Origin: Amphiscolops sp. MND2022 | Lineage: Eukaryota | Assembly (NCBI GenBank): GCA_964187785.1 | Contig: OZ076412.1 | Span: forward strand, 37,138,001-37,202,000 | Direction of reading: 5' to 3' | DNA length: 64,000 nucleotides | Part shown: piece by piece, positions 1,822 through 62,200 of the stretch | Layout: every line of letters starts with the position of its first letter | Position numbering within the stretch: the stretch's first letter is position 1 | Notes under the pieces: model-generated | What the model was told of the DNA's origin: nothing | The model's database searches: none | The model's input: only the letters and a program-made list of their open reading frames with translations | Position numbers and translations under genes: made by a program

Positions 1822-26386
<24,565 letters not shown>

Positions 26387-27273
26387 TTGTGTCCCCTCCC
26401 TTGTCCCAGGGTTGGGTTGTTAATTCGTAATCACTCACCCAAAGAATCTAATCTTGTGACTTCTCTCCTGATTTGTAAGTCACCTTGACTCTTCATCTCT
26501 TTTTTTTTCGCGTTCTAATATCTCCACCCGCAATATTGTCTTGTAGTCTTCAGTACAGTCAACTCCGGTTATAACGAAATCGGTTATAGCGAAATGAGAA
26601 CTTCCGATGAATTTGATCTTCAAATTCGGAAAAGATCATTTCTAATGAGAAGATGGATTGTCTCTTGACTTCATGTCAATGGATGTTTGAGTCACCCTAA
26701 TGTTTAATTGACCTGTTGCTCCTCTTTTAACTGTCATTCTCCTTGCCCTGTTTTTTCTCTCCAAATCTTTCAACAGTAGAATTGTACCGAGAGATGACGT
26801 TTTATTATACTTTTGAAAACGATAATTTTCCTGTTTCGAAGTGACCGGTCAATTGAACACAGGAAATTATTTCCCTAAAGTTGTTTGCCCACACGATTAA
26901 AGTACCATTTTTTTTTCATTTGAGCCTTCTCGGTTGTTATCATGAGCAGCAAAAGTTTATTTCTCTCTTATTTTCGAAGTGGGAAAACATTCATCTTTTA
27001 CTGAAAGTTTACCAATATTGACGTGTCTCTAGCTTGGGACCTACTTTTGGTAATCATTTAAATAATCCATGAAATAATATTTTCACTTAGCGTGTTGTTT
27101 TCACTTGGGAACAGTCAGTCTGTTGCTGGCTACGATTGAACATTTCCTTTCATTACGCTTGAGTGAAATTCACAAACTTTCTGTATCATTTGTACTGTCC
27201 GGTTACGAATGTTACTCGTTTTTGACATGCTTGGTTTCATCTATCTGGCTTCGGTATTTGACTTTCTGTTAGC

Positions 27274-35419: not shown

Positions 35420-36150
35420 TTCAAATTGTTAACACAGTTGGAGTGATTCTGTTTTAAGACATCATTGATGCGCGTAACTTGAAAACTTGCAGTTAGTTTT
35501 TTGCAACTACCAGTTTCAAGTGCAAGCTATAGCTCCCGCTAGTTATCGGAAAAGTTGTCACTATAGTAGCTCTCAAATGAGAGACACAGTCCCAGTCGAA
35601 TGAGAATGAGTCACATATTGCTATCACTAATTCTGTTGCTGTTTTGCTTTCTGACGTTACAAGCCTATCTGTAGAAATGTTGGATCGTTGAGTGAACTTG
35701 ATTGACTTCCTGAATTACACTTGGCCGACATTTTACCTGGTTTTTGACTCGTTCCAAAAACTATCGTATAAATGATTGTGATTATTTTTTATCACAATCT
35801 TTCTACGGGGATGCTACTTTGACAGTCTTTTGCAAAAACCACCGACGAAATTCTGTGTTGTGTACATGTCCTAAGAATTAAACACATATGTGCTAAAAAA
35901 AGTTCTAGTTTTCACTGATCGACATCCTGTTTTCTTACTGTTTGCAATCTAAACCTAGATTAGCGTTCAACGTTGTTTCGAAAGTAATTTCGAGTTTGAC
36001 GTTATTGTACTCTAACCTCATTTTCCGTTCAAAGAGAAACGCTAGCAGATCAGGAACTTTCTTTAGTCAGTTAGTCAACTCTGCTGCTTTGTTCGTAGAT
36101 GCGACCTACCCATTACATTTTGGAAACATTCGGTATTTTCCTTCGATGTT
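35420..36150 (-). mobile_element. Penelope-like element relic, 3' part (RT thumb and GIY-YIG-like region)
   Basis: The reading frame continues across the Gypsy TSD (TTLVSNI|EGKYRM), then ELTN.LKK....FLLNG, SFSFDWD and LKTESLQ resemble PLE C-terminal motifs. Confidence 0.5.
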
Positions 36151-36330
36151 TGAAGAATAGTTTAATCGAGAACTGTTGATAAACAACTGTTGCCATTTTT
36201 AGTTCGTATTTACAAACAAACATTGAGTTCTATATCTGAAACTTGATCTCATTACGATACACTTTGAGCTAGAAAAAGCATTGTTATTTTACAAACGTTT
36301 TCAATTGAGATAATCTCGTAGAAAACAATA
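36151..36330 (+). repeat. 5' LTR of the Gypsy element
   Basis: 175/180 identical to 41981-42160. Confidence 0.93.
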
Positions 36331-36340
36331 TGGCGCAGTC
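36331..36340 (+). promoter_or_regulatory. Primer binding site, probably tRNA-Ser
   Basis: TGGCGCAGTC directly after the 5' LTR, matching the tRNA-Ser-type PBS of 17.6/297-like Gypsy elements. Confidence 0.7.
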
Positions 36341-36374
36341 AACATTCTGAACTATCAGAAAAAACTTCGCTAAA

Positions 36375-39300
36375 ATGGAAGACGAACCAAAAAACTCCAT
36401 GGGAGAAACGAGCAGCCGCTCACTACCAAACAAAATCACCACACGATCGGTTGAACGGACGACCACCCAGAAGTTACCCATACCGATCCTGGAGAAAAAT
36501 GACCACACCAGTGCAAAGCTCTGGTGGAGAAAATTCGCCCAATACAATGAGATGACTCGAGAGTTGGACCTATCAAAGAGGACAATTTCCAAAGAAGTAT
36601 TGCGACAAAACAAGGACCAACTAGAAGAGGAAATAAAAGACGTCTTTATCTGGGCAATCGGACAGTCAGCATTAACAGAAATGACGAAGACGGTAAGAGA
36701 AAGAGAACCAACCTCTTTACCATTGTACAGTCTATACGCACTGTTTAGACTACATTTTGTCCCTGAACGGAATAAACATCATAGCAGAGCCGATTTCTTC
36801 AACCTGAAAAGAGAACCGGGAGAATCGGCAGCCGAAACTTGAAAACGAATTCTGGAAATAGAAAAAACTGCGAATTCGAAGAAATAACAGCAGCAGAATT
36901 ATTAGCCTCAAAATTCCTTTCAGTCATTGGAAAAACAACTGGAGACAACGATCTCAAAAAGAAAACCAAAAAAGGAAAAATGTCGGTAGAAGCTATAACC
37001 GACACAATCCACGAATACATGTACGAAAAAAAATGAACGAATCACGAGATTCGGAAGAAGAAACAAAAATAAAACACGTGGATAGAAAACGAAACTACCA
37101 AAACCGGAAAAAGATAAACCAAATAAATTCAGAAAAGTCGACTGTATCAGATGCGGAGCACCAAACTGGAGCAAGCTTCACGATTGTCCGGCAAAAGCAA
37201 AGAAATGCTTAAACTGTGGAAAAATCGGTCACTACGCAAAATTGTGTAGAACTAAACAAAAAATAGACCGAAGAATAAAACACATCCACCCCGAATCGGA
37301 AGCTTCAAGTGCAGAAAAAGACGAATGGTCACCAAACAGAATACATCTTATCACTAGAATGGTCCATTCAACAAAACAGAACACCAAAGACGGACAACCA
37401 TTCTTCACTACCACGGCATTGGTCAATAACCGACCAATCAAATTCATAATTGATAGTGGATCACCGGTCACACTGGTGCCAAAACACCTATTCAACCATA
37501 CAACAGCTATACACCCCCTACACACGGTACACACGGAGTATAAGGATGTCAACAACAACAAAATAAAGTTCGAAGGAAAAACAACGGCAAAAGTAGAAAT
37601 TAACAGAGAAACAAAATATTTGGAACTACTAATAACAAACAAAAAGAACAAATCCACTGCTTGGACAGGACTGGATGAATCAATTGGGAATCAAACTGGA
37701 TACAGAAAAATCTAACCTGAAGAAACAAAATATCCAAGAAAATCCGGACGTAACAGCTGAAAAGAAAGTTTACCAAACTGTTTCACGAAAATAAAACGGC
37801 AAATGGAATAGAGGTAGACATTCAGCTAAAACCGGATGCAAAAGTGATACAACAGGAAGGCCGACCGATACCGATACATTTACAACCAGCAGTCGGTAAT
37901 GAAATAGAAAAGTTGAAAAAAGGGCATATAGAAAGAACAACCAACATAGACGAAAATTGCTTTCTAAGCCCAGCAGTAATCACCGTTAAGGAAGATAAAA
38001 CGGTTAAATCCGCTTTAGACTCACGGAAATTAAACGAAATAAAAAGAACATGAAAAAAAACATGAAAAGAAAAGCACAAATGCCGAACATGGAGGAATTG
38101 ATATCCCGAATATCAAGAAAAATAGCAGACGGAGAGACCGACCTGGAGAAATCTGGAAATCGAAACTGTATCTGGATTATGCATACGGTCAAATGCAACT
38201 ATCAAAACACGCAAAAGACCTGTGCATATTCGCAATAACCGGAGGCACCTTCACCGGATACTACAGGTTCTTAAAGAGAATTTTTGGACTGGCGGACATC
38301 CCGACCATTTTTCAAGAAAAGATTGACCAAACACTGGAGAACAAACACCCGGCGTGGTTAGACGACATACTAATCGTCACAAAAGAGACAAAAGAACAAC
38401 ACAAACGTGAGTTAACCGAGGTATAACTAAACTAGAAAACGCAGGTTACAGACATAGCGAAAATAAATCAGAATTTTTCAAGTCCGAAATAGAATGTGTG
38501 GGTCACAAAATTGACCAAAACGGTATCAGACCGTTACAAGACAAATTGAGAGCAATACAAGAACTGGAAGAACCAAAAAACCAAAAGGAACTTAAATCCT
38601 TCTTAGGTGCAATTCAGTATTTGTCAAAACATATCGAAAATTTGTCAGCACAAACGGACCTATTGAGACAGTTGTTAAAAAAGAAAAATAAATGGAACTG
38701 GACAACGGAACACTCCGAAGCATTTAACCGAATAAAACGCAAAATCACGGAAATACCGTGCCTTGCACACTATAGCTCCATTCGACCGAACACCATAACA
38801 ACAGATGCCAGTACAAAATGATTAGGCGCAACTCTCTGGCAAGAACAAGACAATGGGGATTTAAAACCGACAGCATTTGTAAGCAGATGTATATCCGACA
38901 CAGAAAAAAAATACGCAGTAAACGAGTTGGAATTAATAGCGGTTGTTTGCGGTTTAGAACACTTTCGTCTGTACATCTACGGAAACCCCCGTCAAACTTT
39001 GGACGGACTACCAAGCTCTCGAACCGCTGATAAAACGCAACCGCTCCAACAAAACATACAGCGCACGCTTAACGCGCTGGTTAGATCGATTAGCAGATTT
39101 TACAAGAAACGTAAACCATATCGCCGGAAAACATCTAGCGCTTACTGATTACTTGAGTAGAAATCCAATCGCACCGGCGCAAAACGATGACGTATACGAA
39201 GAAGGATATGTCATTAACAGCATAGCACCGCACTACAGATTCGTTTCAAAATTTGGTTGCCTTAGCAACCATTCTAACCAATCACAATCAACGAACGGAA

Positions 39301-41790
39301 CAGGAAACTCGACAAAAGCAAACAAATACCGGTCATCGGACAACACGCGTGAACAAAACGCCATTCATAGCCTTACTCGCACTCCAAACAGTGACGTTAA
39401 TTTATTGACAATGGACGCCAAAATTTTTGACAGAGAGCCAAAATTATTCATCTCAAGAGACAGCCAATTTAATTGAACGATGGCGAAACATCGTAAAGTC
39501 GAGAATCTACCGACTATCAAACGGTAATTGGAAGAAATACCATGAGCCGAAATTCCTCCGCGGAGAGAGGAAAATATTCGAAGAAAAACTGGCCGAAATC
39601 ATAAAACGATTGGAAAGCCCTGCCGTAAAAATTAGAAACCGGCAAAATCAAGCCAACTACTTCCCGGACTGGCAGTTCAAAGAAACCGGAAATTTCCAAG
39701 GTGGATTTGTCCCTCAGGATAATCAAGGCACATCCCAAACACGTCCGACTACAATTTACACACCGGACGAGACACCGATGGAGGAAGGAGAGATATCCAG
39801 TGACTCGGAATTGGCACCGTCGGTACTGGAGGTACCCACAATCAATTGGGCGAACTACCTCGGAGTAAAAAGCGTCCGATACATTAAAATGGGACACGCC
39901 CGGTGGATCCAAACACCAGAACCAAATGACTGGGACCATGAAAACACCGTCAGAGAGACCGGAAAAGAATTTGCCACAGTACTCCAATTATTAATGACGG
40001 AGACAACAAACGATCCAAAACTGCTGAAAACCTTCGTTTGTCTGGAAAGAAAACAGTACGACAACATCCCAGAAGAATACAACCAGTACAAACGGAAGCT
40101 ATCCACAAGGTACGGATTAGTATTCTTCGAAGAAAAAATTGTCGTTCCCACAAATTTACGAACAACCGTCATCACACTACTACACAAGGGCCACCGTGCA
40201 ATAAACAAGATGACAATGGCGGCAAAACACTTCTGGTGGCCGAAACTATCTGAAGCAAAACAAAGAAAATGCGACAGCTGCATACCGTGCAAACTTTCCG
40301 GTAAGAATCTTAACTTAAAAAATATACCTGAAACTTCAAGTATAACTTGAAACAAACCAAATATACCTAAAACGGAACAAAATCGGTTACCACCATTAAG
40401 CGCACCAAACGAAAAAATCCAATTGGATTTCATCGGACCAATCACGGAAGAGAACCGTAGATTTTACATTTTACTCTCCATGGACCGGTTTAGCAAATGG
40501 CCGGCAGCCAGTCTATGCAAATCAACGGACGGTAAAATGGCGGCTAATTTTCTTCAACAACACATCCAACTGAACGGCATACCAAAAACGATTAGAACCA
40601 ATAAAGCATCAGCGTTTACGGGTCACCACTTTAGAGAAATCTGTAAAAAGAATTTTATCTCCCTGATATACGGGACACTGTATATACATACCCCCACCGG
40701 CTTAGTAGAACGGGGGGTCAGAACACTAAACGAAAACTTACTTACTAATATAAAAGCGGGTAAACCATTTGGAAAAGCGCTCGACTTAGCATTAGGAGTA
40801 ATGCGAACAACCCCACTCACTAGACTGAAAAAATCGGCATTGGAATTACCTTTCGGTAGAGAACCAAACACGGAGCTGAGTAAAATGCTAAAATTAAGAG
40901 AAATCAAAAAATTAACCAATAACCATTCCGTTGCAGCAAAATCAGAAACCCTACAGGTTTTTACATTCAGTGGAGAAGGCGGTAGTTCCGACCATCTACC
41001 TATGAAACAAAAGAGAAAGCCAACCAAGACGGTTAGTAAATAACCGTTTCAGTTCTTCGAACGAAAAAATACAAAATCAAAATTCGAAAGTCCTTACTAC
41101 GAGAATTACAAACAGCGGTGAAGGGAACTAACCAAACCGTAACTACAGCTGAAAATGAAACTATTCACCGTAAACTAATCAGTAAACCAATTACACCATT
41201 TGAACAGGAAACTTCCAACAGAGGAACCGGACCAAGAGGACCGGACGGAAGATTCGCCCGCAAAGAAGACAAGTCACTAGCCACTCCCGAGCCATCCCAA
41301 TCACAAGACGAGCAATTGGACACCAGCCCAGAAACACCAAACAACCGGAAATGTGGAAAATTTGGTAGGGGAAAACCCAGACTCATAAGGAACCGGAAGA
41401 AATCAGCCTCACCAGAGAAACAACCGGGAACAAACAAAAAAAACAAAGGGGCCCCTAACAATCAACGCAGAACAAATGTCGGAAGCCGACATAGAACAGG
41501 CCATTAATGACACTCAAAAGTCAGGACAAGACCTCCACATTAAAGACACAAACGGAAAGGTATCTAATACTATTGATTCAGACCTAGAATTAGCAAGTAA
41601 CCTTAGTTCCAGCACCGAAATCGATAAAGATTTAGAAACCGCACAAGAAACTAACCTACGCCGGTCAAAACGGCTAACGAAAACAAATCCAGTCATTAGA
41701 TTAAATAATCCAGTTAACCAATCTGATTACAGGAAACACCGCAAAACGCCTAAACTTGTCACCACTACTGGAGACTACAGAAGAAATGCC
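36375..41790 (+). pseudogene. Gypsy gag-pol polyprotein with frameshifts and stops
   Basis: Two CCHC-like knuckles (CIRCG..HDC and CLNCGKIGHYAKLC, about 37143-37250), protease IDSGS (about 37447), RT WLDD (about 38357), RNase H TDAS (about 38800), integrase HHCC (about 40180-40290) and core MDFIGP (40423-41043). Confidence 0.9.
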
Positions 41791-41980
41791 GGAGCAGGAA
41801 AGCGAAGACAACCAGTAATCCGCTCACAACTTCAAAAGTTCCAGTCAATGGAAAACAACAACGCCGATCACGGACACCCGGATACTACACCAAGACGTGG
41901 ACGGCATACCGACCACAGCATTAACCTGGACGGCAACGGAAGTCAATTGGATACCTCTCATCCAATCACAAAGGGGGAAA

Positions 41981-42160
41981 AGAAGAATAGTTTATTCGAG
42001 AACTGTTGATAAGCAACTGTTGCCATTTTTAGTTCGTATTTACAAACAAACATTGAGTTCTATATCTGAAACTTGATCTCATTACGATACACTTTGAGCT
42101 AGAAAAAGCATTGTTATTTTACGAACGTTTTCAATTGAGATAATCTCGTAGAATACAATA
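41981..42160 (+). repeat. 3' LTR of the Gypsy element
   Basis: Follows the PPT AAGGGGGAAA (41971-41980); direct repeat of 36151-36330. Confidence 0.93.
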
Positions 42161-42950
42161 ATGTTACTAACTAAGGTAGTGTTTTGTGATTTTGAATATT
42201 TTCGAAATATTGTCTCTTCCAAGTTAAGTTTTTCCAAGCGATCGATGACTTGTATTAAACGTTTGTTTTCAATATCGTTGACTTGTCTGACTTTTTTGAC
42301 ATTAAAAATTGGAAACTTTCTTCAGATCCAAAGCTGGATGTTTAGCCGTCGTAGGATTATTGATAGTATGATAGTACGTTTACTTGTTTGTAGAACTGCT
42401 CATTACCTTTGCTATAAACAAGTGTAATGGGAAAGTGCAGGTGCGTGTTTCCGCGCGACCACTCTCGTGCTTCAGGCGGCAAGTCGCACAGGTCAGGTGT
42501 TCATGGTTAAGTAATAGGATAGTTGCTTTTCGAGCCAGAGCTTTTGTGTTCGAACCGGTGCGAATGTGGAAACTTTGTTACAAGCTGCGCTGATTCCAAG
42601 CTGTATATATAGCTTCGAGTGAGTGATATAGGATGTGTTTCATGAGGATGCTAGCAAGGACTTTATTTATGCGGTTTGCGATGGCCATTTCCATACAACC
42701 GTCAGCGTTTTTGTAGGTGAACTTAACGACTAGGTCCAATTTGCCAAACTTATTAGACAACCCAACAACGACCACAAGCAAATCTGCTCATTGGGTGAGA
42801 GACTATCCGAGACACCACTACATTTATGATCACAGAGGGAACAGTTATTACACTCGATTGAATTTCAGCGTACACCCTCCCCAGACAATGAGCAAATGTC
42901 GATTGCTGCAACCACTTTCACAAATTTACTAGAACTTTATCAAGATTACA
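42161..42950 (-). mobile_element. Penelope-like element relic, RT part
   Basis: YKNADGCMEM....KVLASILMKH resembles the PLE YKQ.DG..MG..SPVLANIFM.H motif; LKTNV.YKSS resembles F.T.VYRKPT. Interrupted by a repeat at about 42421-42590. Confidence 0.5.
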
Positions 42951-44811: not shown

Positions 44812-47627
44812 TTCAATTAATGTCTGATTTCCCTTTTTGGATATTCTGATGGGTCCTAAATTTTCACCCGAAGTCTCTTTCAGGGAAGTAATATGGTAAA
44901 ATTATAGAAAGTTAGAACAATGAAACAGGAATTAGACGAATAAAACAAATGCAAAATCAAAGATCATTGAAGATCAACTGAAATATTCTGAAACAAATCG
45001 TTGATCAAGATTATTACAAAGTACCACAGGATTACTCGAAGGCAAATTTCAATTAGGTGACTCTGAACCGACGTCAGGTATGACTACTTTTCGCTAGGCA
45101 AGTGGGATAAATCCCATGTGTGAACTCATACCTCGTTCAGCTCGGCGTTTTTCGGAAGCGAGATATTCCAATCAATTACGCTTCTCCAGGATTAAGCTTT
45201 CGGTTTCATCTCATTTTTAAGGAAAAGTTAATCAACTTCCTGCAGAAGCTCAATTCCGCGTCACTTCTTACTCTTTTCACTGCCTATTCGTGACGCCGAA
45301 ACTGAAGTTGGCAATAAAAACCCATTGACCTAGCTACTGACACGGGAATAAAATAGAATTTGTCACTGAAGAAAGCCGGGAATTTCAACAATTTCAAGAA
45401 GCGAATTGCCTTAAACAACTAGCACCTTTCTCAATTGCGAAAATGATACCTGTTATCACCAATTTGTATTTATGACTAAAATTACAGATTTAAAATTCTG
45501 GTAGCACTCCGAGTAACTAGTTGGTCTCAGAACAACTAAACAGTTGACCAGATCGTTGACTCAGGTCGTAAAAAAAGGAAAGCTTCACCTAACCGAAATA
45601 ATAGGTATTAAAGGCAACAAACATGACTAAATAATGTACTAGCAACAAATATTTTACGTGTATACTGGAAAATTTCACTCTGACTCAGTAGATTTATCAT
45701 CACTTTGTCCGATTAATTTGAGTAAGCAGTCTTGGCAGAGGACTCAGACAACTATAGTATTACGTCGCCTGGAATGTTGACTCAGATTTCAGAAATACTC
45801 AAGTTCTAAACTTCAGCAAGACGGCATCAGTACTTTTCTGCATTTCATACTTTTTTTAAAGGGGCTTCTTTTAAGCGCTGGACTAGATTAAATAGCACTA
45901 AAGATTAGTTTAAATATTATTAAATGTTTGAGCGCGCTAGATGGTTGACTGAGCGGTTGACTCAGTTCAACTCAACTGGTAGGCTGCATGGGTCTGCTAC
46001 TCAGTTGAGTGAAATGCATTTCCGCTTAAGTGTGGTTGGCTGAATTATTTAGCCACTTTTGCTTGCTTGCATTAGCTGTCGTTGTTGCGGCAGCACACCA
46101 GTCAGCGCGCTTACTGAATTAGATTCAGTCAACGCACTGGTTGTTTGACTACAAATAAATACTCCACTCGTTACTCTTAAGTATTTACATATGTATGTTC
46201 TTCAGGTACTGCGCGATAGTATTTTTATTAATCGGACCATTATGTACATATTTAAATGCTGCAATTGATATTTTGTGGGGTATTTCATTCAAGGTCTGTT
46301 GATGTGCTGTCTTCCATCATTCGTCCTTTCCGGCGCTTCCGTTAACTTTTCTTCCTCACAACGCTGACGGGGTTGTGACAATCACCAACATCCGCTGTTT
46401 GTAGAAGTGACGCGCTTCCGCTGTTATCGCTATGGACCTGCAATGCAGTAATTAGTAATTCCAAACGTGAAGTAGCAATCTCAAATTTTGAACTTCTAAT
46501 TAAATGCAGATCCATGGCTATAACCGCGGTTTGCATTCTTCTCGGTGTCAGTAAATACCGCCATTTCATTGCTGTTTTGAGTTTTCTTTCGATATTTTAC
46601 TTGATAGCAAAAATTTTTCATAGTAATGTTTTTGCTGGTACTGGTAGCCAGCTATACGGCACCATCCATTTGTGCAATGTTCTGTTTTTAAGTAATCAGG
46701 TTCTCAACATCTAATTTTCTAGGCTACAACCGCAGTAAGTACTAAAATTGAACCAATTCATCGGTTTGTCAACCCTCGTTTGACCTGTTGAGAGTGATAT
46801 CTGTGTTACGTACTTCTTTGATATCTGTGTTACGTACCATATTTTGGTTAACGCTGTAGAGCCTCGCTACCGAAGACTGTCTCTTACAAGGTTAACAAGA
46901 AGTTTAAGTCAGACGAATTGCTACATTCCACCGCGGAGTCCAATGAGTCAGCGATGTTATTTAGAATACCACAGCAGTACGATGGTAAGTATAATAGAGT
47001 GTCTAAGATGCTTGGCACTGCAGTGTAGACTCTATTATAGAATATCTTTCTTACTATTTGAAGCTATTCGTTTGTACTAATCAATCTCATGGTCTGTAAA
47101 ATTTTGTTATTACGTCGAACGTTTGAAGCTCTTCATCTGAACTATTATTGCAGTAGATTCACTCATTCTTCATTGCAGAAAAACTGGGTGCTACTTTCAT
47201 TTGATTGAAGTCTTATGAACCAAATATTCACAAGTTTCTCCTCCATGATGGAGAATTGTTCACCGTTTTTTACCCTTTGGTAAAGATTAACAATAATTAG
47301 ATAATCTCATTAATGTTATACTCAGTTACGTGGCCAAATCAAATTTGTTTGGACATAAAACTTCATCAGAAAACCTTTTCTTGCTTAACTTGGATTGTTT
47401 GTCATATGAATTACCCGATCTAACAACCAACGACATATCAACAGCCTTACTTGTGACAACTTTCGAGTGGATCATCGTTGAATTGATCTTTTCTTCAGTT
47501 TCCTACTTTTGGATATCGGGAACTTGGGAGTATTGTAGCTGATGATTCAAATGGCTCTTCCATAATTCAAACTTCAAAGATTTTTCTAAAAACTTCCGTA
47601 ACTCAATTCAACTGAAATCAGCACTCA

Positions 47628-47927
47628 ATGGCAAACAAATGTTTCCACGGTCTTATCAAGGACTGGAAAAGTGTTTTGACCAACGATGGTGATTACCTGA
47701 TCCGACAGGATCCCAAATTTGGCAACCAATACATTTTAACTGTGAAAATAGGAGAGAAGTATTTGAACATTTTGATGCTGAACCAAGAGGGAGAGGTCGT
47801 GATGGGCGAAAAACGATTTCGAAGCATTGAGGAGTTCTTACATATTCATTCAAGCAATGGAGCTAAACTCAAATTGCGTGATCAAAGTTTTGTGGAGTTA
47901 AGGAGACCAGTTACTTTAGAGTTGTAA
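47628..47927 (+). CDS. Divergent SH2 domain (SHC-like), 99-aa ORF; stand-alone gene, terminal exon or pseudo-exon
   Basis: FHG...GDYLIRQD...QYILTV...LMLNQEGEV...RFRSIEEFL..H...LRRPV aligns by eye with the SHC SH2 (WFHG..GDFLVRES..QYVLT..LLVDPEGVV..RFESVSHLI.YH..LQQPV). The betaB Arg is retained. ATTAAA lies downstream near 48086. Confidence 0.8.
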   Translation: MANKCFHGLIKDWKSVLTNDGDYLIRQDPKFGNQYILTVKIGEKYLNILMLNQEGEVVMGEKRFRSIEEFLHIHSSNGAKLKLRDQSFVELRRPVTLEL

Positions 47928-48882
47928 ATGAAACTTTCGACCAACGGACGCATCCGAAGTTTGACTTGAACTAGCAAGGAAGTATTTCGCGAACAGAATG
48001 TAACGAATAGAAACTTGAATTGGCTCTTTACTATTGTGCTTAGGTAAAAACTTTTTTGTAATATTGTATCTTATAGGGCATTGAATTAAATGAGCTCTAA
48101 TTTATAGTTTTATCTCTACGTGTTTTGTCCGCGTCGATCATCAGCAACCCTATCCAGTATTTTTAATTTTGAAAATGTAACGACAAGCTTCCGTTAGCTT
48201 GCCTTTGCGATCCTGGAGAAATCTAAAGGGGAAGGGTTTTCATGCACGCGGCCGTCTCCCGTCTACTAAAAGACACCTTTTGCCCCTAATATCCCGCTAG
48301 AGGGGGCTTCATTGCTCATGGATGTCTTCCAATTCATCCTGTAACTTGTAAAGATAATGGACGTTTTCTCTGACCAGGTTAACCGTTACACTAGTGTTAA
48401 AAACGGGGCCTAGAAAAAGGGCTTCAATTCTTTTGTGTATAGTTAGTAATACAAGTAGTAATACAAGTTACAAGAAGTAGATCACGAGCTCGACAATCAC
48501 GACCCAGCCACGCATTCCGCCAACTGGGGCTCCCTCGACGGCCCGCAAAGTGGTAACTACGCAAATTGACTCATGCTTCCAGTATTCATTACATGAGTAC
48601 CGTCTTGCGAATTGTCGCAGGCTATTTTTATCAAATTCCTGCTGACGGCGACAATGCTAACCCCCCGCCAGGTACCTGGCGAATTCAAGAAACTCATGTA
48701 CCTCAAGTCATTATGGCCCCGGTAAAACTTATTTTTAGTTTCAATTTATACTGTTCTGTTACTTAATAATTAGTTCAGTGCCTCTTCTGTCTTGCTAATG
48801 GATTGCTGTTAGATAACTTTGATAAACAAAACAACACAATTAACGTAGAAACCTAAATAGTGATACTAGTCGTATGAATAGC

Positions 48883-50708
48883 GGTGTCAGGACATTTCGT
48901 CCTATGCAAATTTAACCGCTGCCAATTCAACCGTTCACAATTTCAACCGCTTGCAATTTCATCCGTTTACACTTTCAACCTTTTGCAATTTCAACCTACG
49001 GCAATTTCAACCTATCACACTTCCACCTAATTGCTCTCAAACCGTGCTAATTATGAAAGCCTTTATGGTAATTAGTAAAACTATAATTAGAGTCCAGCAA
49101 CTAACAATAATCTTTCCCACTATGAAATGTGATAATTACTTGCAACGTTTTAGTAGTATAAATAGCGAAGTCAACTGAATTGCAACTAGTCCACACAACA
49201 AGTCCAATAATTTTGAATCTCAAAGCTCAAAGTGTTAATTCAAATCATAAAATCAAATAGAGGGGGCAATATTGCAGTACACAACGGTTACTGTTACAAT
49301 CAAAAACAAGTCACTTCAAGTTGCATTCATTGGAGATGCACAAAATTCTATTCAATTGAATGCCCTGCCGTTTTGAAGACAAACCAGAACGTGGTCATTA
49401 GTTTGAAAGACTGTCACACTCATGAAAGCGACCCTTCCGAGTGTAAAGCGAAAGAAGTTGCCAGAGACATTGACACCAACGGTGGCCATAGCAAGTGAAA
49501 TTTCAGTAATCTCCGACGATTATGCAATCCAGCTTTCATTGCCGAAAAGTGGACGAACTTGCACTCTATTTAAAAAAAATTTCTATAGAGGGCCCACAGT
49601 CACGAAAAAGGCACCTTTTCCAATAGAATTATGGAACCAGTTCGAGGCCGCTGGCGAAGGAGTGGCAAGGACAACTAACAGCGTAGAAGGATAGCATTAT
49701 GGACGTCAAGCTTATTTCACTGGCTCCCAACCAAACGTATGGTTGCTTCTACGGAATTTGGAGAAAGATTCGAAAATGCAGGAACTCAAATACCTTCAAG
49801 AGACGACTGGAATTGTTTGTTCCAAGCGCCCACGTTTTGAAAAAATCAAAAAACAAATGCAAGTCATACAAAATGGCTACACTTTCGAGAACGTCTTGCC
49901 TCATTTGCGAGCAGTCGCCAACTTTAGATGAAAACAATGAACTTTTTTGCTGCATTGATTTGTTACTTTTTTGATAGGATTCATTTTTGTGAGTATGTAT
50001 TTGGAATTCGCGTTTTGCTCAATTCAATTCTGACAATGGGAATAATTTTTAATCAGTTACAATTAACTGGTACCCGGTTGCGTCCTCCCCCGGGTACCCA
50101 AGTTTGGCGCACTACTTCCCATAACTGCTCTTTGATGTAGCCACATTCGAACTATGCCGGTGAAACCACAAGAGCGTGACAGAGAATCAGACCAACCTTT
50201 TAAAGGAGTAGCACATGTCTAAGTTGTTAATTGTAACTAAACGTTTTTAAAAAATGAGGAATTTTAATAGCGTTTAACCAAAAACTTTTTTATCACAATT
50301 GTTCAGTCACTCCACTTTCACACTTTCAAATAGACGTCATCGATGATAAGTTTTTGATCGCGAATAGCAAGTTGTTAACTGCTTTTTCAAATTGTGTCAC
50401 ACCATTACATCTTTCTGTGTTTCCGTACATTGCAAATTTCAGTGCAACGGAAGTTTTCAATGCGCTCAATTTTATGCGTCCTGACAGTTTGTGTGCTTTT
50501 ATTTTGCCGCGCTTCGATAATGTTCAATTAGTTTTAGGACGTTCGCAAAGAACGCAACGACCTTGAACTAATTAAAATAGGTTGAAATGGAAAGCGGTTG
50601 AAATTGCAAGCGGTTGAAATTGCAAGCGTTTGAAAGTGTAATAGGTTGAAATGACAGCGGTTGAAATTGCATAGGTTGAAATTGCATAGGACGAAATGAC
50701 ATGTAACC
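48883..50708 (+). mobile_element. Internally deleted Mutator-like element (MULE) with FLYWCH zinc finger
   Basis: TIRs GGTGTCAGGACATTTCGTCCTATGC / GCATAGGACGAAATGACATGTAACC; 9-bp TSD ATGAATAGC (48874-48882 and 50709-50717). FLYWCH ORF at 49232-49498 (GYCY...WRC..CPA..HTH); C-terminal FP..WN..RTTNSVEG.H at about 49600-49700. Confidence 0.93.
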
Positions 50709-53700: not shown

Positions 53701-54327
53701 CCCATAGTATACTAAAACTGAGATTAGTCAACAGAATTCAACTGATCTGATGTGTGGTTGGTAGCATATGTTTTTCATGAGATTTTCGAAGTTCGCGGAA
53801 GAACAGACAAAACTTTAACAGCATGTCTGATTTTGGAGAAATTAGAGTAATTACAAAATTATCCGCTAATGAAGTGGACTGGTGGTTTTCATTTTCAATG
53901 TTCAAAGAGTCAAAAACCTGATTTTAAGGAAGTAATGACCTTCATCTTTGGTCATGTTTAAAGGTCTTCTCGACCGAAAGGTCGACGGGATGTTTTCTAT
54001 GTCGCTTATCCCAGTGTTTCGTTCTATTTCGTTCACTGTCTTTCCCGTCAATGAGTTAATTTTTCAAGACAAACTCCCTATCAGCTTCAGAATCTCTCTT
54101 GATTAGTCTCGGTTTTCTACTGAGCTTCCTAGTGAATCTTTTCTAGCTTTTCTCTTCGACACTTGTTCGAGAATTTCGCCAGTGATTTCAAAGTTGTGCT
54201 TTCAAGGAATTTTTATAGAAAAACTCCTTGAGCAATGCTCTTTTCTTGAGGAATAAGACAAGGCAGTTTCAACTTTTAGTGATTTTCAAATTTTTCAGTC
54301 CGGCGTCCCTCGAATGCAGAGAAAGCG

Positions 54328-57300
54328 GCAGCTCTGTTCCACCTTCCCGAACTCAGACTCTTACTTTGTTTATGCTTCTCGAGCAAAGCAAGCGTCCACT
54401 TTGTGTCTGACTTGCGACTTCCCTCCGCCCCCAATTCCCGCCTTTAAAAACGCCGCAACTGAGCGTGGCCGAGAAATAATATGGATGATTCAAAATGCGC
54501 TTTGGCGAAGCAAAATTAAATCAAATCCTGACAATCATTTTTTACGGAAAAAAAAACTTTAAAATAAGTCACAAAGCTTGAAACGTGTGTGTGTATTTCA
54601 ATAGATCAATAGGATATTGAGGATGAGAGTTTGAAACAACCCAAATTGCGGTGTCAGGCCACGGTCTGGGACGCATGAACAACTGATTATTATTTTCACG
54701 TGAATATAGTTAGAAACTGCACACAATCGATGATATAGTCTCAGGACTAGTCAACAGCTAATGTAATTTTGCTAAAAACACAACAAAAATTAACAAAAAC
54801 ACAGTATTTCATTGCTACAATGAATTCAATATTTTTCTTCTCCTGGGGCACTTCCTGGACCCTACTACACAAAGGTATTTCCCACAAAAAATATTGTGAT
54901 ATTTATAACATTTACATGTTCAGCATCGTTTTCAAAATAGTTTTTTTGCAAAAATTAAGTTTACATGTACTCATTTGTTCCAACAATAACATATTAGTGG
55001 TTCAATTCCAATACAACGCAAATTTCAAGTTGAGGCTGCTTGCCAGGCCCGCGTCCCAATTGTTATTTTTGAGGCCGCTTGCTACGCCGCGTGACTGCCG
55101 CTTCGAATCTCAGGCCATTCGCCAGGCCGCGCTTACCAGTTATTGTTAATTGCATAGCATCGTTTTATTATTTACTATAGCTCCGTGCTTGTTGCTGTCA
55201 ATCTGTAAACTGTAAATAAAATGCACTCGGTAACTAGTTGTTATTATTAAGTACATGAATGTTTAGCTCCGTTGTTTCAACGTTGACAGGTTAAATTAGT
55301 TGTTACATTCTTCAGGTGTTGTCACCTTCCTATCATCCTTTCCTTCAATTTCTTTTTTTCTTCTCCGTCGACTGAGCTCGTTTCGTGAAAAACATTACAG
55401 CTCAGCTGGACTTTGACAGTTGATTTTTTTGAACTTTTTAAAGTGTTCGAAAACCAACCAAAGACAGACTAACTAGCTATTCTGCACACTTTGACAAGAC
55501 GTCTTTTCCACAGATCAATGTTCCTTCTGCAAAGTACTGTAAAAACAAAAGCAGCCAGGAACTTTGAGAAGAACTGTAAAAACAGCTCTAGGTCGAGCAT
55601 ATTCCATTCAATTGCGCCGATTAAAAAATAACAAGTTCCAGCGTTTCACTTCCGCGGAAAACGCATTAGGTTTATTCCATTCCTAGCCCAGCAGATTAAA
55701 TATTATTTTAAGACACTCAAAAAGAGTGATGAAAACCACAAACGCAAGGCAAAATAAAGGGTTTCTGATCCTTTCACACCATTTCACATCAGCATTAGCG
55801 TTGCAACCTGATCGAAAACATTTTCAACAATACGCATTGGACATTTTCCAGGTTTAATATAGGGTCCCAAAGTACATAACACGAAACTTGACTCGAAAGG
55901 CCTTACAATACACTGGATATATTTCCCGCGCTCCGGACAAATTTCACAACTAAAATAGTCCTTTTTCGAATAAAACATCTGTACTGGATTGGATGGACAA
56001 GTTATCAACAGTGACGAAGGGAAAAATGTTGTTTGATTTCTTGAAGACCAAGCTCTGGTATACATCTTTGTGTGAATCTTCCAGCAGCTAAACGCAATGG
56101 TGTAATGATGTAATGGTGCTCTGCGTTTTTCCATCTTCCAACGTAAACCCGATAACTCTTTTTGATTTGATATCGTTTCTCTTCACCTGTCGCAAAGTGA
56201 TCCGTCGCACCTAGCGGTGCTCATGATCCCTGACTTCGCCGTAACCCAGAATGTTTGAATTGAAGCTGTTAGAAGCTAAAAGCGTTTTTACTCGAGAGAA
56301 CAGAGAATTATCTGGACCGACTGGCAGGAGTAATCACTCAAACAAATCTGAACTAGATATGAAATCTATTCAAACAGGAAGTCAACTTTAAGTTTTCATG
56401 ACTTTGTTCAAAACATTATGTCAATGACATAGTTCATTTTTGAGCAATTAGGGTTGTCCTTTATGTAGCCCCCACTTTAACAGCTTTCAAAAGTTTTTCA
56501 GATGACGAGTGAATAGTTTCTGAGAGAAGTGCGGTATCGCTACATAATCCTTCCTCAAAAGAAAAGATAAGTTTTGTGCCTGCTGTTGCTGAATTCGAGT
56601 GACTGCCAGAGGGGGCTGAAGAAGATCTCCGAAGACTTATAGAAGAGAGCTTAAAAATCACCCTCCAAAGCCCAAAAACAGAACAGAGCTCCTCGAAAGC
56701 AATGGCTTCACTATTGTGCCAAGAGGATTGACAGGAAGCGCGATGGGAAGGGTGACTGGCAGACTACCCAAGCTGCGAAGAAGAGAAGGGTTCAGGAGCA
56801 GCTCTGTTCCACCTTCCCGAACTCAGACTCTTACTTTGTTTATGCTTCTCGAGCAAAGCAAGCGTCCACTTTGTGTCTGACTTGCGACTTCCCTCCGCCC
56901 CCAATTCCCGCCTTTAAAAACGCCGCAACTGAGCGTGGCCGAGAAATAATATGGATGATTCAAAATGCGCTTTGGCGAAGCAAAATTAAATCAAATCCTG
57001 ACAATCATTTTTTACGGAAAAAAAAACTTTAAAATAAGTCACAAAGCTTGAAACGTGTGTGTGTATTTCAATAGATCAATAGGATATTGAGGATGAGAGT
57101 TTGAAACAACCCAAATTGCGGTGTCAGGCCACGGTCTGGGACGCATGAACAACTGATTATTATTTTCACGTGAATATAGTTAGAAACTGCACACAATCGA
57201 TGATATAGTCTCAGGACTAGTCAACAGCTAATGTAATTTTGCTAAAAACACAACAAAAATTAACAAAAACACAGTATTTCATTGCTACAATGAATTCAAT

Positions 57301-59272
57301 ATTTTTCTTCTCCTGGGGCACTTCCTGGACCCTACTACACAAAGGTATTTCCCACAAAAAATATTGTGATATTTATAACATTTACATGTTCAGCATCGTT
57401 TTCAAAATAGTTTTTTTGCAAAAATTAAGTTTACATGTACTCATTTGTTCCAACAATAACATATTAGTGGTTCAATTCCAATACAACGCAAATTTCAAGT
57501 TGAGGCTGCTTGCCAGGCCCGCGTCCCAATTGTTATTTTTGAGGCCGCTTGCTACGCCGCGTGACTGCCGCTTCGAATCTCAGGCCATTCGCCAGGCCGC
57601 GCTTACCAGTTATTGTTAATTGCATAGCATCGTTTTATTATTTACTATAGCTCCGTGCTTGTTGCTGTCAATCTGTAAACTGTAAATAAAATGCACTCGG
57701 TAACTAGTTGTTATTATTAAGTACATGAATGTTTAGCTCCGTTGTTTCAACGTTGACAGGTTAAATTAGTTGTTACATTCTTCAGGTGTTGTCACCTTCC
57801 TATCATCCTTTCCTTCAATTTCTTTTTTTCTTCTCCGTCGACTGAGCTCGTTTCGTGAAAAACATTACAGCTCAGCTGGACTTTGACAGTTGATTTTTTT
57901 GAACTTTTTAAAGTGTTCGAAAACCAACCAAAGACAGACTAACTAGCTATTCTGCACACTTTGACAAGACGTCTTTTCCACAGATCAATGTTCCTTCTGC
58001 AAAGTACTGTAAAAACAAAAGCAGCCAGGAACTTTGAGAAGAACTGTAAAAACAGCTCTAGGTCGAGCATATTCCATTCAATTGCGCCGATTAAAAAATA
58101 ACAAGTTCCAGCGTTTCACTTCCGCGGAAAACGCATTAGGTTTATTCCATTCCTAGCCCAGCAGATTAAATATTATTTTAAGACACTCAAAAAGAGTGAT
58201 GAAAACCACAAACGCAAGGCAAAATAAAGGGTTTCTGATCCTTTCACACCATTTCACATCAGCATTAGCGTTGCAACCTGATCGAAAACATTTTCAACAA
58301 TACGCATTGGACATTTTCCAGGTTTAATATAGGGTCCCAAAGTACATAACACGAAACTTGACTCGAAAGGCCTTACAATACACTGGATATATTTCCCGCG
58401 CTCCGGACAAATTTCACAACTAAAATAGTCCTTTTTCGAATAAAACATCTGTACTGGATTGGATGGACAAGTTATCAACAGTGACGAAGGGAAAAATGTT
58501 GTTTGATTTCTTGAAGACCAAGCTCTGGTATACATCTTTGTGTGAATCTTCCAGCAGCTAAACGCAATGGTGTAATGATGTAATGGTGCTCTGCGTTTTT
58601 CCATCTTCCAACGTAAACCCGATAACTCTTTTTGATTTGATATCGTTTCTCTTCACCTGTCGCAAAGTGATCCGTCGCACCTAGCGGTGCTCATGATCCC
58701 TGACTTCGCCGTAACCCAGAATGTTTGAATTGAAGCTGTTAGAAGCTAAAAGCGTTTTTACTCGAGAGAACAGAGAATTATCTGGACCGACTGGCAGGAG
58801 TAATCACTCAAACAAATCTGAACTAGATATGAAATCTATTCAAACAGGAAGTCAACTTTAAGTTTTCATGACTTTGTTCAAAACATTATGTCAATGACAT
58901 AGTTCATTTTTGAGCAATTAGGGTTGTCCTTTATGTAGCCCCCACTTTAACAGCTTTCAAAAGTTTTTCAGATGACGAGTGAATAGTTTCTGAGAGAAGT
59001 GCGGTATCGCTACATAATCCTTCCTCAAAAGAAAAGATAAGTTTTGTGCCTGCTGTTGCTGAATTCGAGTGACTGCCAGAGGGGGCTGAAGAAGATCTCC
59101 GAAGACTTATAGAAGAGAGCTTAAAAATCACCCTCCAAAGCCCAAAAACAGAACAGAGCTCCTCGAAAGCAATGGCTTCACTATTGTGCCAAGAGGATTG
59201 ACAGGAAGCGCGATGGGAAGGGTGACTGGCAGACTACCCAAGCTGCGAAGAAGAGAAGGGTTCAGGAGCAGC
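54328..59272. repeat. Direct tandem duplication, 2 x 2470 bp
   Basis: Three ORF pairs are identical at an offset of exactly 2470 (54769/57239, 55784/58254, 56461/58931). GCAGC occurs at all three boundaries (54328, 56798, 59268). Confidence 0.95.
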
Positions 59273-59289
59273 GGGGTCAAGAAGAGGAG

Positions 59290-62200
59290 GCATTCGTCGT
59301 TGGAGACGCATTTGAGGGTTGAGGTTGGTTCTTTTTGATAGGTAGTTCGCGTGGCTTTGTAATAGCTTTAATGACAGATTTGTTCTCTGATGCTTTGACT
59401 TTGGCTACACGTACTAGGTTGTCATTTTCAGTATATGCATTTTCAATCACTCCAATAGGCCAGTGTAGGGGAGGTAGGTTGTCCTCTGTTATAAAAACTA
59501 AATCGCCACCAAAAAGGTCAGGATGTTCCGTTTTGTTTTTTGGTCTGATTATCAGCGTTGTTAAGTATTTTTTTGACCACTGTTTTCAAAAATCAGTAAT
59601 GTGCTTGCTGACGTATTTGAAGCGTTTTTCAAAGCATTCTTCAATAATGATACATCTCACAGGTTCAACTACTAGAGGTAGTTGTGAGATATTTCAATCC
59701 ATTGACAAACATAGCGGGTGTAAGTGGCGGGGAATCTTTCGGAATATCAGAAAATTATGTGAATGGCAAGAATTCAAAGTTCAGCCAATCTGGCAAATAG
59801 TTGTATATGAATCAATGGAAGAAACTTCTTCGAGAAAAGAATGCAGCTTCTTTGCCTGATGTGGATGTTCAAATCCTATGTGCCCAGTATCAAATCCATG
59901 AAAATAGTATTGAGGAAAACAATTGGCAATTCAACAAGCCGCAAGATCCACCTTGAGACTTGTTGATTTGCCAATTGTTTTCCTCAATACTATTTTCATG
60001 GATTTGATACTGAATTCCCTAATACCACCCAAATTCTGGGACTGGGAGCTCGTGTAGGGATCGTTACCCAGTTCACACCAAGGTTGAGAACAGCATCAGG
60101 CAAAGAAGCTGCATACTTTTCTTGAAGAGAATTCTTCCATTGAATACATAATTCTATGAACCAATAAAGTGTTTTCCGTTGTCTGAATAGATTTGTTTCG
60201 GGTATCCTCTTCTCGAAATGAATCGTATGATCGCACGATGTTCAAGTGTATCGCTTTCGTTACGAAGCAAGCAAATAGAATCACGTAGCGTTTCAATTGA
60301 GGTTTCTGCTCTTTGAACAAAATTGAACCAGTAAGATCAATTCCAACGTGTGAGATTGGTGGAGATTGGGGATGGTGTAAGTCTTACTTTCGGCAACTAT
60401 CCCTTCGACTGTTTGGTAGCTCTACATTTAAACCGGAAGCCAGTTATACATTGGGCTATCACTTGACGTGTCATTGATCTGGCACCAATTATCCAAGACT
60501 TGAGCTCGTAGTGTCTGTGCTGTATCATTAGAAAAGACAAAGGATGTTTATTCGTCAAAATTGAAGGCTAATTGACTTCATCTGGCTATTCGGAACTTGC
60601 TAAACGTCCCCCACCGTTAAGTATTCCCTTCTCATCGATGAATGGAGATAATTGTGAAATTTTCGAAACTTTGGCTACTAAATTGGTATTTTTCAAGCTC
60701 TGGATATCGTCCGAAGTTGCTGACTTTTTAACTTGACGAACCAAGAAATTGAGTGCTTCTTTACGTGCTGCATTATGCTCATGAATTTGCCTGCTGAGTT
60801 TTATGACGTTTTTCCAAACCCACGTCATCGTGTTGATAAGTTTTTGGAGACCACTGAATCGTGCTATATCAATGATTGGCAATTTTTGGTCATTTTCACT
60901 AGTAGACTGTGGATCAGTGTCCACTGCTATAGCTGCCATGTTTAGTTTTCCCGCACCGTTGCTGGTGTCCTTTGATTTGTAACCGAAATTGAGTTTGATT
61001 TCTTGATTTCAATTGTTCGATCAAGAGCTTCGGGTTGATCAGGGCGTACTAAGGACACAGGAGAATTCAGCCAATCGGGCCATTCCACCATAGGGACATG
61101 TCTAAAAGAAGTTTAGAACCGATGGGGTGGGTAGCCAAACCAGCAGGATTCTGCATTGTTGGAACTTGATACCAAAGTTCAGGTGATGAAATTTGTTGTA
61201 TTGTGACCACTCCGTTTGTAACAAAGTTTTGGAAGCGATATGGTTGTGACTTGACCCAAGATAGTGCAATCGTAGAATCACTGTAGGCATAGAGTCGTGG
61301 ATATAGCCTCAACTTCCAAGAACTTCTAGAATGACTTTTGTTGTTTGTGACGCAATATTCATAGCAGACAGCTCCAATCTCGGAAGGGTTTCTAGTTTTT
61401 ATTCGGTGCAGGTTGGGATTTTGCTGTGAGCAAAGAGGAGGCTCTTTTGGTTGCTGATGGCGTACGGGCAAATAAACTGAAGCAAGAGGCACTTTCACTG
61501 GCATCACAAAAGATGTGAAGCTCGAGTTTTTACTTGTCAAATTTGACCAAAATGTCATCTTTTTTGGTCTTCTGTCGAGGTATCTCCAGGATATCCAGAT
61601 GCTTTAATGAAGGCAACCAATGGTGAAAAAGCTTCCCATTGGGTGCCTCAACGTCGTCGTCTCAACCAAAAAACAGTTCCCAAGTCATTTGGAAATGTAT
61701 ATTTGGCGGATTTGTCACTGGCGTGACCAGTCCGAGGGGATCAAACGATCGTCCCAAGTTCGAAGAAATGATTCTGCGGGTCTTCAAAGTGCTAGGAAAC
61801 TCACGGGGCACCTCAAAGTATTACTACATTGAAACCTCTTTGACTGAGCTCGGTGCACTGGAAGACTGTTTTTTGTTGCGAAGTTGACCACAATATGATG
61901 AATTCTGACATAGGTCAATTTTCGAAATTTCTTGAATCTGTCCAAAAGTTTCTGAAATCGATTGGGGCACGGATGTTGAGTATGCAGATACCAAATTTGG
62001 TTGATTTGAAGCACTAGAAGTTGCTTTTTCAGAACTCCAAAGTTGACCGAACTCGACCTTCGAGGGTTTTTTCGGCTATTTTTTCCGACTGCTCATTTGC
62101 TTTGGAAGATCCAAAATTGTGCTCAACATATTCGGGCAAGTATATGGAGACTATTCATCGAAATTGTTGCAGTTCTGCGGCCGTTCTTCTTGAAGATTTT

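What the first reader, a model, noticed from the sequence alone, without database searches (positions are those of the whole stretch)
46510..47927. Candidate small spliced, possibly membrane-anchored, SH2 adaptor gene
Upstream of the SHC-like SH2 ORF are exon-like segments with canonical splice sites: 46510/46514-46550 (donor GTAAAT), a 12-nt microexon at 46723-46734 (ctaat..tttctAG / GTAAGT), and 46860-46984 (donor GTAAGT). Joined in phases 1, 1 and 0 to an acceptor at 47620-47621, they give an uninterrupted 159-aa ORF from the ATG at 46514: MAITAVCILLGV-SYNRKPRYRR-LSLTR...YIPPRSP...-SH2. That is a short hydrophobic segment, a basic patch, a Ser/Tyr-rich linker and a C-terminal SH2. Membrane-anchored or SH2-only adaptors are uncommon in animals (established knowledge); the joined model is inference. 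Alternatively this is a decaying gene: a stronger acceptor at 47497-47498 is in frame except for one TGA (47613), a candidate exon at 47179-47279 has one TGA, and a +1 shift would restore an SHC-like LNGKQ(W)FHG start.
Basis: partly seen in the sequence, partly recalled or inferred. Interest (0 to 1): 0.7.

Follow-up and report, generated by a model that had tools for sequence, protein, structure and literature searches.

The report
Small conserved SH2-only protein gene

Summary
The ORF at 47628-47927 (+) is a genuine but divergent SH2 domain. It scores 25.1 bits against Pfam SH2 (cut-off 21). The AlphaFold model has pLDDT 86 and TM 0.84 to the SHC SH2 structure 1mil, over the whole 99 residues.

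Two other animal contigs from ENA assemblies carry orthologues, at 64% and about 47% identity. Between these loci only the SH2 coding segment can be aligned. Synonymous sites are saturated (pS 0.80) and dN is 0.22, so the ORF is under purifying selection and is not decaying. In all three loci:
- an in-frame stop lies 4-5 codons upstream of an ATG;
- that ATG sits 4-7 codons before the CFHG motif;
- the stop codon position is conserved.

The upstream "exons" exist as sequence motifs, and the 159-aa joined ORF reproduces from the assembly. They are not supported as coding:
- they are not conserved;
- the proposed ATG (46514) reads ATA in the other haplotype;
- a CT insertion inside the 12-nt microexon, present in all read-derived contigs, breaks the frame;
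- the 12-residue hydrophobic stretch is too short to span a membrane.

The window holds no PTB domain. No RNA data were available, so expression and the 5' UTR structure remain untested.

Verdict: a lineage-restricted, SHC-derived SH2-only miniprotein gene, which is a new member of a known kind.

The parts
47628..47927 (+). Coding sequence of a 99-aa SH2-only protein (MANKCFHG...RRPVTLEL, stop TAA 47925-47927).
   Evidence: Pfam SH2 25.1 bits. AF2 pLDDT 86.2 and Foldseek TM 0.84 to SHC SH2 1mil over 99 columns. Orthologues at 64% and about 47% identity with the same stop position. pS 0.80 against dN 0.22, and differences by codon position of 27/16/49.
47613..47615 (+). In-frame TGA five codons upstream of the ATG. 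It marks the sequence upstream of 47628 as untranslated leader.
   Evidence: Confirmed by read contigs and by the second haplotype. The L003 and L004 orthologous loci have an in-frame TAG at the equivalent place, 5-6 codons upstream of their ATG.
47619..47621 (+). cAG, acceptor-like, 6 nt upstream of the ATG. It may be the end of a 5'-UTR intron (inference only).
   Evidence: An AG lies 6-15 nt upstream of the ATG in all three loci. AG dinucleotides are common, and no RNA data exist to test it.
48085..48090 (+). ATTAAA, a poly(A)-signal-like hexamer 158 nt after the stop.
   Evidence: L004 has AATAAA 100 nt after its stop; L003 has none within 500 nt. This is weak evidence.
46514..46550 (+). 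Not supported as coding.
   Evidence: 46516 G>A turns the ATG into ATA in haplotype L005 and in read contigs X2-X4. It is not conserved in L003 or L004.
46723..46734 (+). Not supported.
   Evidence: A CT insertion after 46730 is present in all four read-derived contig sets and in L005, which makes the segment 14 nt and breaks the frame.
46860..46984 (+). Not supported as coding; it could still be a non-coding leader exon.
Evidence: There is no conservation with the orthologous loci; the best tblastx match has E 5.1.

Best explanation
Window 47628-47927 (+) is the complete coding sequence of a lineage-restricted gene for a 99-residue protein that is one SH2 domain and nothing else. Translation starts at the conserved ATG 47628. 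Everything upstream is leader, which may or may not be spliced.

The domain descends from the SHC-type SH2 lineage, by an old partial duplication that kept only the SH2 part. By inference, the free module binds phosphotyrosine motifs through its retained FLVR arginine (R26). It would then act as a competitor or adaptor in tyrosine-kinase signalling, as the vertebrate SH2-only proteins SAP and EAT-2 do.

The phosphate pocket is atypical:
- a two-residue deletion in helix alpha-A removes the alpha-A2 arginine;
- Asp replaces the usual Ser at beta-B7 (RQD instead of RES) in all three species;
- the beta-D4 histidine is not kept.

Shown: the gene is real, selected, SH2-only in its conserved part, and independent of a PTB gene. 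Inferred: the start codon, expression and ligand binding.
For: Domain and fold: Pfam SH2 is above its cut-off. The best solved relatives are SHC SH2 structures. The AF2 model has pLDDT 86.2 and TM 0.84 to 1mil across all 99 residues, so the ORF from the ATG contains a whole domain with nothing missing.

Selection: a search of 1.84 billion representatives found only two close relatives, P0001 (64% identity, 98 aa) and P0003. Their contigs L003 and L004 share nothing with the window except the SH2 coding segment, at both DNA and translated level. This holds over 19.5 kb upstream in the L003 species. pS is 0.80 (saturated), dN is 0.22, and third-position changes dominate.

Start and stop: all three loci have an in-frame stop 4-5 codons before an ATG that lies 4-7 codons before CFHG, and all end at ...LRxPxxxL-stop.

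Pocket: the alignment with SHC-type SH2s shows R26 retained, the alpha-A deletion and RQD.

Origin: within the genome the nearest relative is another divergent SHC-like SH2 (35% identity, E 1.6e-15), then the canonical SHC SH2 (27%). The Src-type SH2 in the same window shows no significant similarity.
Against: - No RNA evidence. The only public runs holding the stretch look like genomic DNA of one sample. Transcription, the 5' end and splicing are therefore unverified.
- A phase-0 acceptor-like AG exists between the upstream stop and the ATG in every locus, so fast-evolving upstream coding exons cannot be excluded from sequence alone.
- The third orthologue (L004) is interrupted after FLIRQ by 2.6 kb with only a GC-AG boundary available. 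It could be an intron or a disabling insertion.
- The degenerate phosphate pocket makes phosphotyrosine binding uncertain.
- The lack of polymorphism in the ORF between haplotypes is not exon-specific. It is part of a low-heterozygosity block starting at 47212.
Confidence: 0.68

Rival explanations
1. The SH2 exon is the last exon of a larger gene. Its upstream coding exons evolve too fast, are too short, or lie too far away to be seen by comparison. They would be spliced at the AG just upstream of the ATG, in phase 0.
For: A phase-0 AG is available between the upstream stop and the ATG in all three loci. In L003 it has a good pyrimidine tract (ttttgtag|CAG). Two GTAAGT donors lie within 900 nt upstream in the window.
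Against: - No upstream segment is conserved in 10-19.5 kb of the orthologous loci, while the SH2 part keeps 47-64% identity.
- An ATG is kept just upstream of the domain in all three species, each preceded by a stop.
- The domain is complete from that ATG.
Confidence: 0.17
2. One reading: a 159-aa, four-exon protein with an N-terminal hydrophobic anchor, a basic patch, a Ser/Tyr linker and the SH2.
For: The splice-like motifs are present and the assembly sequence gives an uninterrupted 159-aa ORF. Strict-donor paths are uncommon in shuffles, 17 of 300.
Against: - The CT insertion in the 12-nt microexon, seen in all read contigs and in the second haplotype, shifts the frame into TAA.
- The start codon is lost (ATA) in the second haplotype.
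- The segments are not conserved.
- All haplotype differences in segment 3 are nonsynonymous.
- With donors relaxed to GTRA, 87% of shuffles yield such a path.
- A 12-residue hydrophobic run is too short for a transmembrane helix (established knowledge).
Confidence: 0.03
3. A decaying duplicate (pseudogene) of the SHC terminal exon, whose SH2 part happens to remain open.
For: There is an in-frame TGA at 47613 just upstream. The domain has a low Pfam score, an atypical W-to-C change at the domain start and an alpha-A deletion. No expression evidence exists.
Against: - The ORF is open in three species that are saturated at synonymous sites, with dN 0.22.
- The start region and the stop position are conserved.
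- Flanks are unalignable while the ORF aligns at 70.5% DNA identity.
- Similarity to the SHC paralogues is only 27-35% and confined to the SH2, so the duplication is old. An unconstrained copy of that age would not stay open.
Confidence: 0.05

Closest known systems
SHC adaptor proteins (PTB-CH1-SH2), SH2 domain (PDB 1mil, 1tce)
   Same: This is the best sequence and fold match for the domain: E about 1e-5 and TM 0.84. The nearest paralogues in the same genome are SHC-like: L002 with a YYN-containing linker, and the canonical SHC at C3:9.67 Mb. The SH2 is C-terminal and ends the protein soon after the domain.
   Different: There is no PTB domain in the window and no CH1 linker with YxN sites. 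Identity is only 27-35%. W is replaced by C at the start of the domain (CFHG). A two-residue deletion removes the alpha-A2 arginine, and the motif reads RQD instead of RES.
SAP/SH2D1A and EAT-2/SH2D1B (vertebrate SH2-only adaptors)
   Same: The architecture is the same: one free SH2 domain of about 100-130 residues with essentially no other module. From this comes the inferred mode of action, competition or adaptor function at phosphotyrosine motifs.
   Different: There is no specific sequence kinship; the SH2D1B cluster scores only 0.83 in the Atlas feature search, below the lead threshold. This protein lacks even the short C-terminal tail that carries the tyrosines of EAT-2. Its origin is independent, from an SHC-type SH2. 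The function is untested.
Small SH2-only predicted proteins of nematodes (ESM Atlas clusters of 78-84 aa)
   Same: These are the nearest clusters by language-model features, scoring 0.90. They are short predicted proteins consisting of an SH2 domain.
   Different: This is a feature-space resemblance only, with no alignment support. The HMMER search of all representatives did not return them as close relatives, and many such entries may be fragments.

Membership tests
SH2 domain (Pfam PF00017) | Profile score above the curated gathering threshold | tested here: met
   25.1 bits against a cut-off of 21, E 1.8e-5. Only profile positions 14-77 align.
SH2 domain (Pfam PF00017) | SH2 fold: a central beta-sheet flanked by two helices | tested here: met
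   The AF2 model has pLDDT 86.2. Foldseek gives 400 or more PDB SH2 hits at E<=0.001, the best being 1mil at TM 0.84. Helix alpha-A is shortened to one turn.
SH2 domain (Pfam PF00017) | Invariant FLVR arginine (beta-B5) that binds the phosphate | tested here: met
   R26 in YLIRQ aligns with FLVRE of the SHC-type domains. It is kept in L003 (YLVRQ) and L004 (FLIRQ).
SH2 domain (Pfam PF00017) | Secondary phosphate ligands: Arg alpha-A2, Ser/Thr beta-B7, His beta-D4 | tested here: not met
   A two-residue deletion falls where alpha-A2 lies. Beta-B7 is Asp in all three species. Beta-D4 is N, S or H in the three species. These residues are typical of the family, not obligatory.
SH2 domain (Pfam PF00017) | Phosphotyrosine-dependent peptide binding | not testable with these tools
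   This needs recombinant protein and phosphopeptide binding assays.
SHC adaptor family | N-terminal PTB (PID) domain in the same gene | tested here: not met
   The whole-genome PF00640 search gives no hit on the window. The canonical PTB-then-SH2 gene is at C3:9.66-9.67 Mb.
SHC adaptor family | CH1 linker with Grb2-binding YxN tyrosines upstream of the SH2 | tested here: not met
   A stop lies 5 codons upstream of the ATG. There is no similarity to the L002 linker outside the SH2.
SH2-only adaptors (SAP/EAT-2 type architecture) | Protein consists of a single SH2 domain with no other module | tested here: inconclusive
   The conserved ORF with its conserved ATG and upstream stop gives 98-101 aa in the three species, and the fold covers all of it. 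No transcript evidence confirms the start.
SH2-only adaptors (SAP/EAT-2 type architecture) | Sequence kinship with SH2D1A/SH2D1B | tested here: not met
   The best relatives are SHC, chimaerin, Vav and Grb2 SH2s. SH2D1B appears only as a weak feature-space neighbour at 0.83.
   The hydrophobic run is 12 residues. Its ATG and its frame fail in reads and in the second haplotype. It is not conserved. The ORF's own N-terminus, MANK, has no Gly2 for myristoylation (read from the sequence).

The most novel reading that the evidence does not exclude
It would have been carved out of an SHC-type SH2, with a remodelled phosphate pocket: no Arg alpha-A2, a conserved Asp at beta-B7, and Cys in place of the domain's first Trp. 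Such a pocket could recognise something other than a canonical phosphotyrosine motif. The protein would then be a minimal natural SH2 'decoy', showing convergent evolution of SH2-only signalling modulators outside vertebrates.
Probability: 0.25. Interest if true: 0.5.

Novelty: new member of a known kind. Interest (0 to 1): 0.3.

Why it matters
If the 99-residue product is made, it is one of the smallest natural SH2 proteins, and an SH2-only regulator that arose independently of the vertebrate SAP/EAT-2 family. It would be a compact test case in two ways. First, for how a free SH2 module modulates tyrosine-kinase signalling. Second, for which pocket residues are dispensable, since Arg beta-B5 is kept while Arg alpha-A2, Ser beta-B7 and His beta-D4 are lost.

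For annotation, the lesson is practical. The gene should be modelled from ATG 47628, not with the spliced N-terminus, and the assembly appears to lack a CT dinucleotide after 46730. Beyond that, it is an ordinary lineage-specific domain duplicate.

Tried and rejected
Laying them gave no joints, so splicing could not be tested.
- Word-indexed protein searches, with the single ORF and with the three-sequence profile, returned only the three family members and no annotated or longer relatives.
- DNA alignment of the 240 nt upstream of the ATG in the three loci showed no conserved promoter or acceptor block.
- Synteny walk: 19.5 kb upstream of the L003 orthologue holds no Src-type kinase and nothing else shared with the window. 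The Src-family kinase gene 21 kb upstream in the window is therefore not a conserved neighbour.
- Polymorphism as a test of constraint was rejected. The ORF shows no haplotype differences, but neither does its surrounding stretch from 47212 to 48153. This is a regional low-heterozygosity block.
- TE-borne gene was rejected. 46383-48174 is single-copy in the genome.
The apparent similarity in that frame is the out-of-frame reading of conserved DNA, and that frame has a stop in L003.
- The L004 intervening 2.6 kb has no terminal inverted or direct repeats at its ends, so 'intron or insertion' stays open.
- A literature search for SH2-only proteins in invertebrates found nothing relevant.
- No tRNA lies in 45800-48800.

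Full report
**Setting**

The window is part of chromosome-scale piece C4 of a 1.07-Gb animal genome. On the + strand the window holds:
- a Src-family kinase gene: SH3 near 10.1 kb, a strong SH2 at 14345-14596, and kinase exons from 17.0 to 26.4 kb;
- a retroelement with an integrase at 39.4-41.0 kb;
- the target SH2 ORF at 47.6-47.9 kb;
- a FLYWCH zinc-finger ORF at 49.2 kb.

**The observation**

The ORF 47628-47927 (open from 47616) is an SH2 domain.
- Pfam SH2 gives 25.1 bits against a cut-off of 21, with only profile positions 14-77 aligned.
- The best solved relatives are the SHC SH2 structures 1tce and 1mil, E about 1e-5.
- An AlphaFold2 model built on a 13-sequence alignment has mean pLDDT 86.2. 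It superposes on 1mil at TM 0.84 over 99 alignment columns. The 99 residues from the ATG therefore contain the entire domain.

Joining the four segments reproduces the 159-aa ORF from the assembly.

**The upstream model fails several tests**

1. Reads. The four public runs that hold the stretch are DNA-like and come from one sample. Their contigs all carry a CT insertion after 46730, inside the 12-nt microexon. Three of the four read A instead of G at 46516, which turns the proposed ATG into ATA.
2. Second haplotype. The protein look-up returned two contigs of the same species. L006 is identical to the window. L005 is the other haplotype, at 97.8% identity. L005 has the same CT insertion and the same ATG-to-ATA change, plus three SNPs in the 125-nt segment. 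With the CT insertion, the joined frame ends at a TAA in the third segment.
3. Chance. With GTRA donors, 262 of 300 do.
4. Conservation: none (see below).
5. Length. A 12-residue hydrophobic run is too short for a membrane span (established knowledge).

**Comparative evidence**

An exhaustive HMMER search of 1.84 billion representatives gave only two close relatives.
- P0001 is 98 aa at 64% identity. It lies on a 410-kb contig of ENA assembly ERZ26859043 (L003).
- P0003 lies on a 155-kb contig of ERZ25071359 (L004).

In L004 the domain is in two pieces. MNNISGSCFHG...FLIRQ is at 7339-7428, and DRNF...MKL-stop begins 2.6 kb downstream. The only boundary that fits is GC-AG, in phase 0. Joined that way, the product is 101 aa and about 47% identical to the window's protein. 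The intervening DNA has no terminal repeats. I cannot tell an intron from an insertion.

Between the window and L003, blastn aligns only 47624-47874, at 70.5% identity. tblastx of the whole 64-kb window against L003, L004 and a further 19.5 kb upstream of the L003 gene (L010) finds nothing else above noise. Nei-Gojobori counts for window against L003 give pS 0.80 (saturated) and dN 0.22. Differences by codon position are 27, 16 and 49. That is purifying selection on this frame, so the 'decaying gene' alternative is rejected.

**Where translation starts**

The in-frame context upstream of the domain is:

| Locus | In-frame context |
|---|---|
| Window | stop-N-Q-H-S-M-A-N-K-CFHG |
| L003 | stop-Q-L-N-S-L-M-A-N-K-CFHG |
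| L004 | stop-T-I-D-E-Q-M-N-N-I-S-G-S-CFHG |

In each species a stop lies 4-5 codons before an ATG, and that ATG lies 4-7 codons before the first structural residue. Similarity between loci begins at the ATG. The C-terminus ends at the same position in all three (...LRxPxxxL-stop). The simplest reading is a 98-101-aa SH2-only protein.

It is matched by a TAG in the other two loci. It is therefore a normal feature of an untranslated leader.

An AG lies 6-15 nt before the ATG in each locus. A 5'-UTR intron, or a phase-0 coding junction, cannot be excluded without RNA. I give that rival 0.17.

**Origin**

In the same genome the closest relative is the SH2 at C3:41672563 (L002), at 35% identity and E 1.6e-15. 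L002 sits in a 224-codon terminal exon with a YYNLPE-containing linker. Next comes the canonical SHC SH2 at C3:9.67 Mb, at 27% identity. It reads WFHGPISR...FLVRE and is preceded by PTB hits at 9.66 Mb. The Src-type SH2 of the window shows no significant similarity.

Similarity to both SHC-like genes is confined to the SH2. The gene is thus an old partial duplicate of an SHC-type SH2. It is single-copy and not TE-borne.

**Likely function (inference)**

A free SH2 module can only act by occupying ligands. It may compete with other SH2 proteins, or bridge through a second surface, as SAP and EAT-2 do (established knowledge).

The key FLVR arginine (R26) is invariant in the three species. Three other pocket features are atypical:
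- The alpha-A2 arginine is lost to a two-residue deletion.
- Beta-B7 is a conserved Asp.
- Beta-D4 varies (N, S or H).

The domain's first Trp is also Cys in all three. Phosphotyrosine binding is therefore plausible but not assured.

**Limits**

- There is no RNA or protein evidence.
- There are only three species, with saturated synonymous divergence.
- The taxon is not verified.
- The lack of haplotype differences in the ORF is uninformative. It belongs to a low-heterozygosity block from 47212 onward.

**Verdict**

This is a real, selected, lineage-restricted SH2-only miniprotein gene, and a new member of a known kind. The membrane-anchored spliced model is not supported.

Noticed in passing
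window 46730: The assembly lacks a CT dinucleotide that is present in all four read-derived contig sets, including the one that otherwise matches the reference haplotype exactly, and in the alternative haplotype contig L005. This is probably a 2-bp assembly error.
   Followed up: partly
window 9700-26400 (+): A Src-family kinase gene: SH3 near 10.1 kb, SH2 at 14345-14596 (83 bits), and kinase exons at 17028-17381 and 26024-26386. It is not a conserved neighbour of the SH2-only gene in the L003 species.
   Followed up: partly
window 36000-42370 (+): An A-rich retroelement with gag-like CCHC, Integrase_H2C2 and rve ORFs. The other haplotype (L005) stops aligning with the window upstream of 42370. 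The two haplotypes therefore differ structurally here, possibly by a polymorphic insertion.
   Followed up: partly
window 46308-46382: A dispersed repeat of about 75 nt, with at least 16 copies at 75-90% identity on many chromosomes. It is not a tRNA by ARAGORN, and its nature is unknown.
   Followed up: partly
window 49232-49498 (+): An ORF with a FLYWCH zinc-finger domain (39.5 bits), 1.3 kb downstream of the SH2 gene. It is absent from the orthologous L003 locus and may be transposon-derived.
   Followed up: no
window 54300-59300: A tandem duplication with a period of about 2470 bp. ORF pairs 54769/57239 and 55784/58254 repeat, and the L006 self-matches show the same repeat.
   Followed up: no
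L002 = G000:C3:41671063-41674344 (exon 1196-1812): A second divergent SHC-like SH2 (IFHG, YLLRLD) at the end of a 224-codon exon, with a YYNLPE motif that resembles the SHC CH1 tyrosines. A PTB hit lies 5.3 kb downstream on the same strand, not upstream, so the gene structure is unclear.
   Followed up: partly
L004 7429-10045: In the most distant orthologue the SH2 is split after FLIRQ by 2.6 kb. Only a GC-AG boundary is available, and CAG stands on both sides. It could be intron gain or an insertion with a 3-bp duplication.
   Followed up: partly
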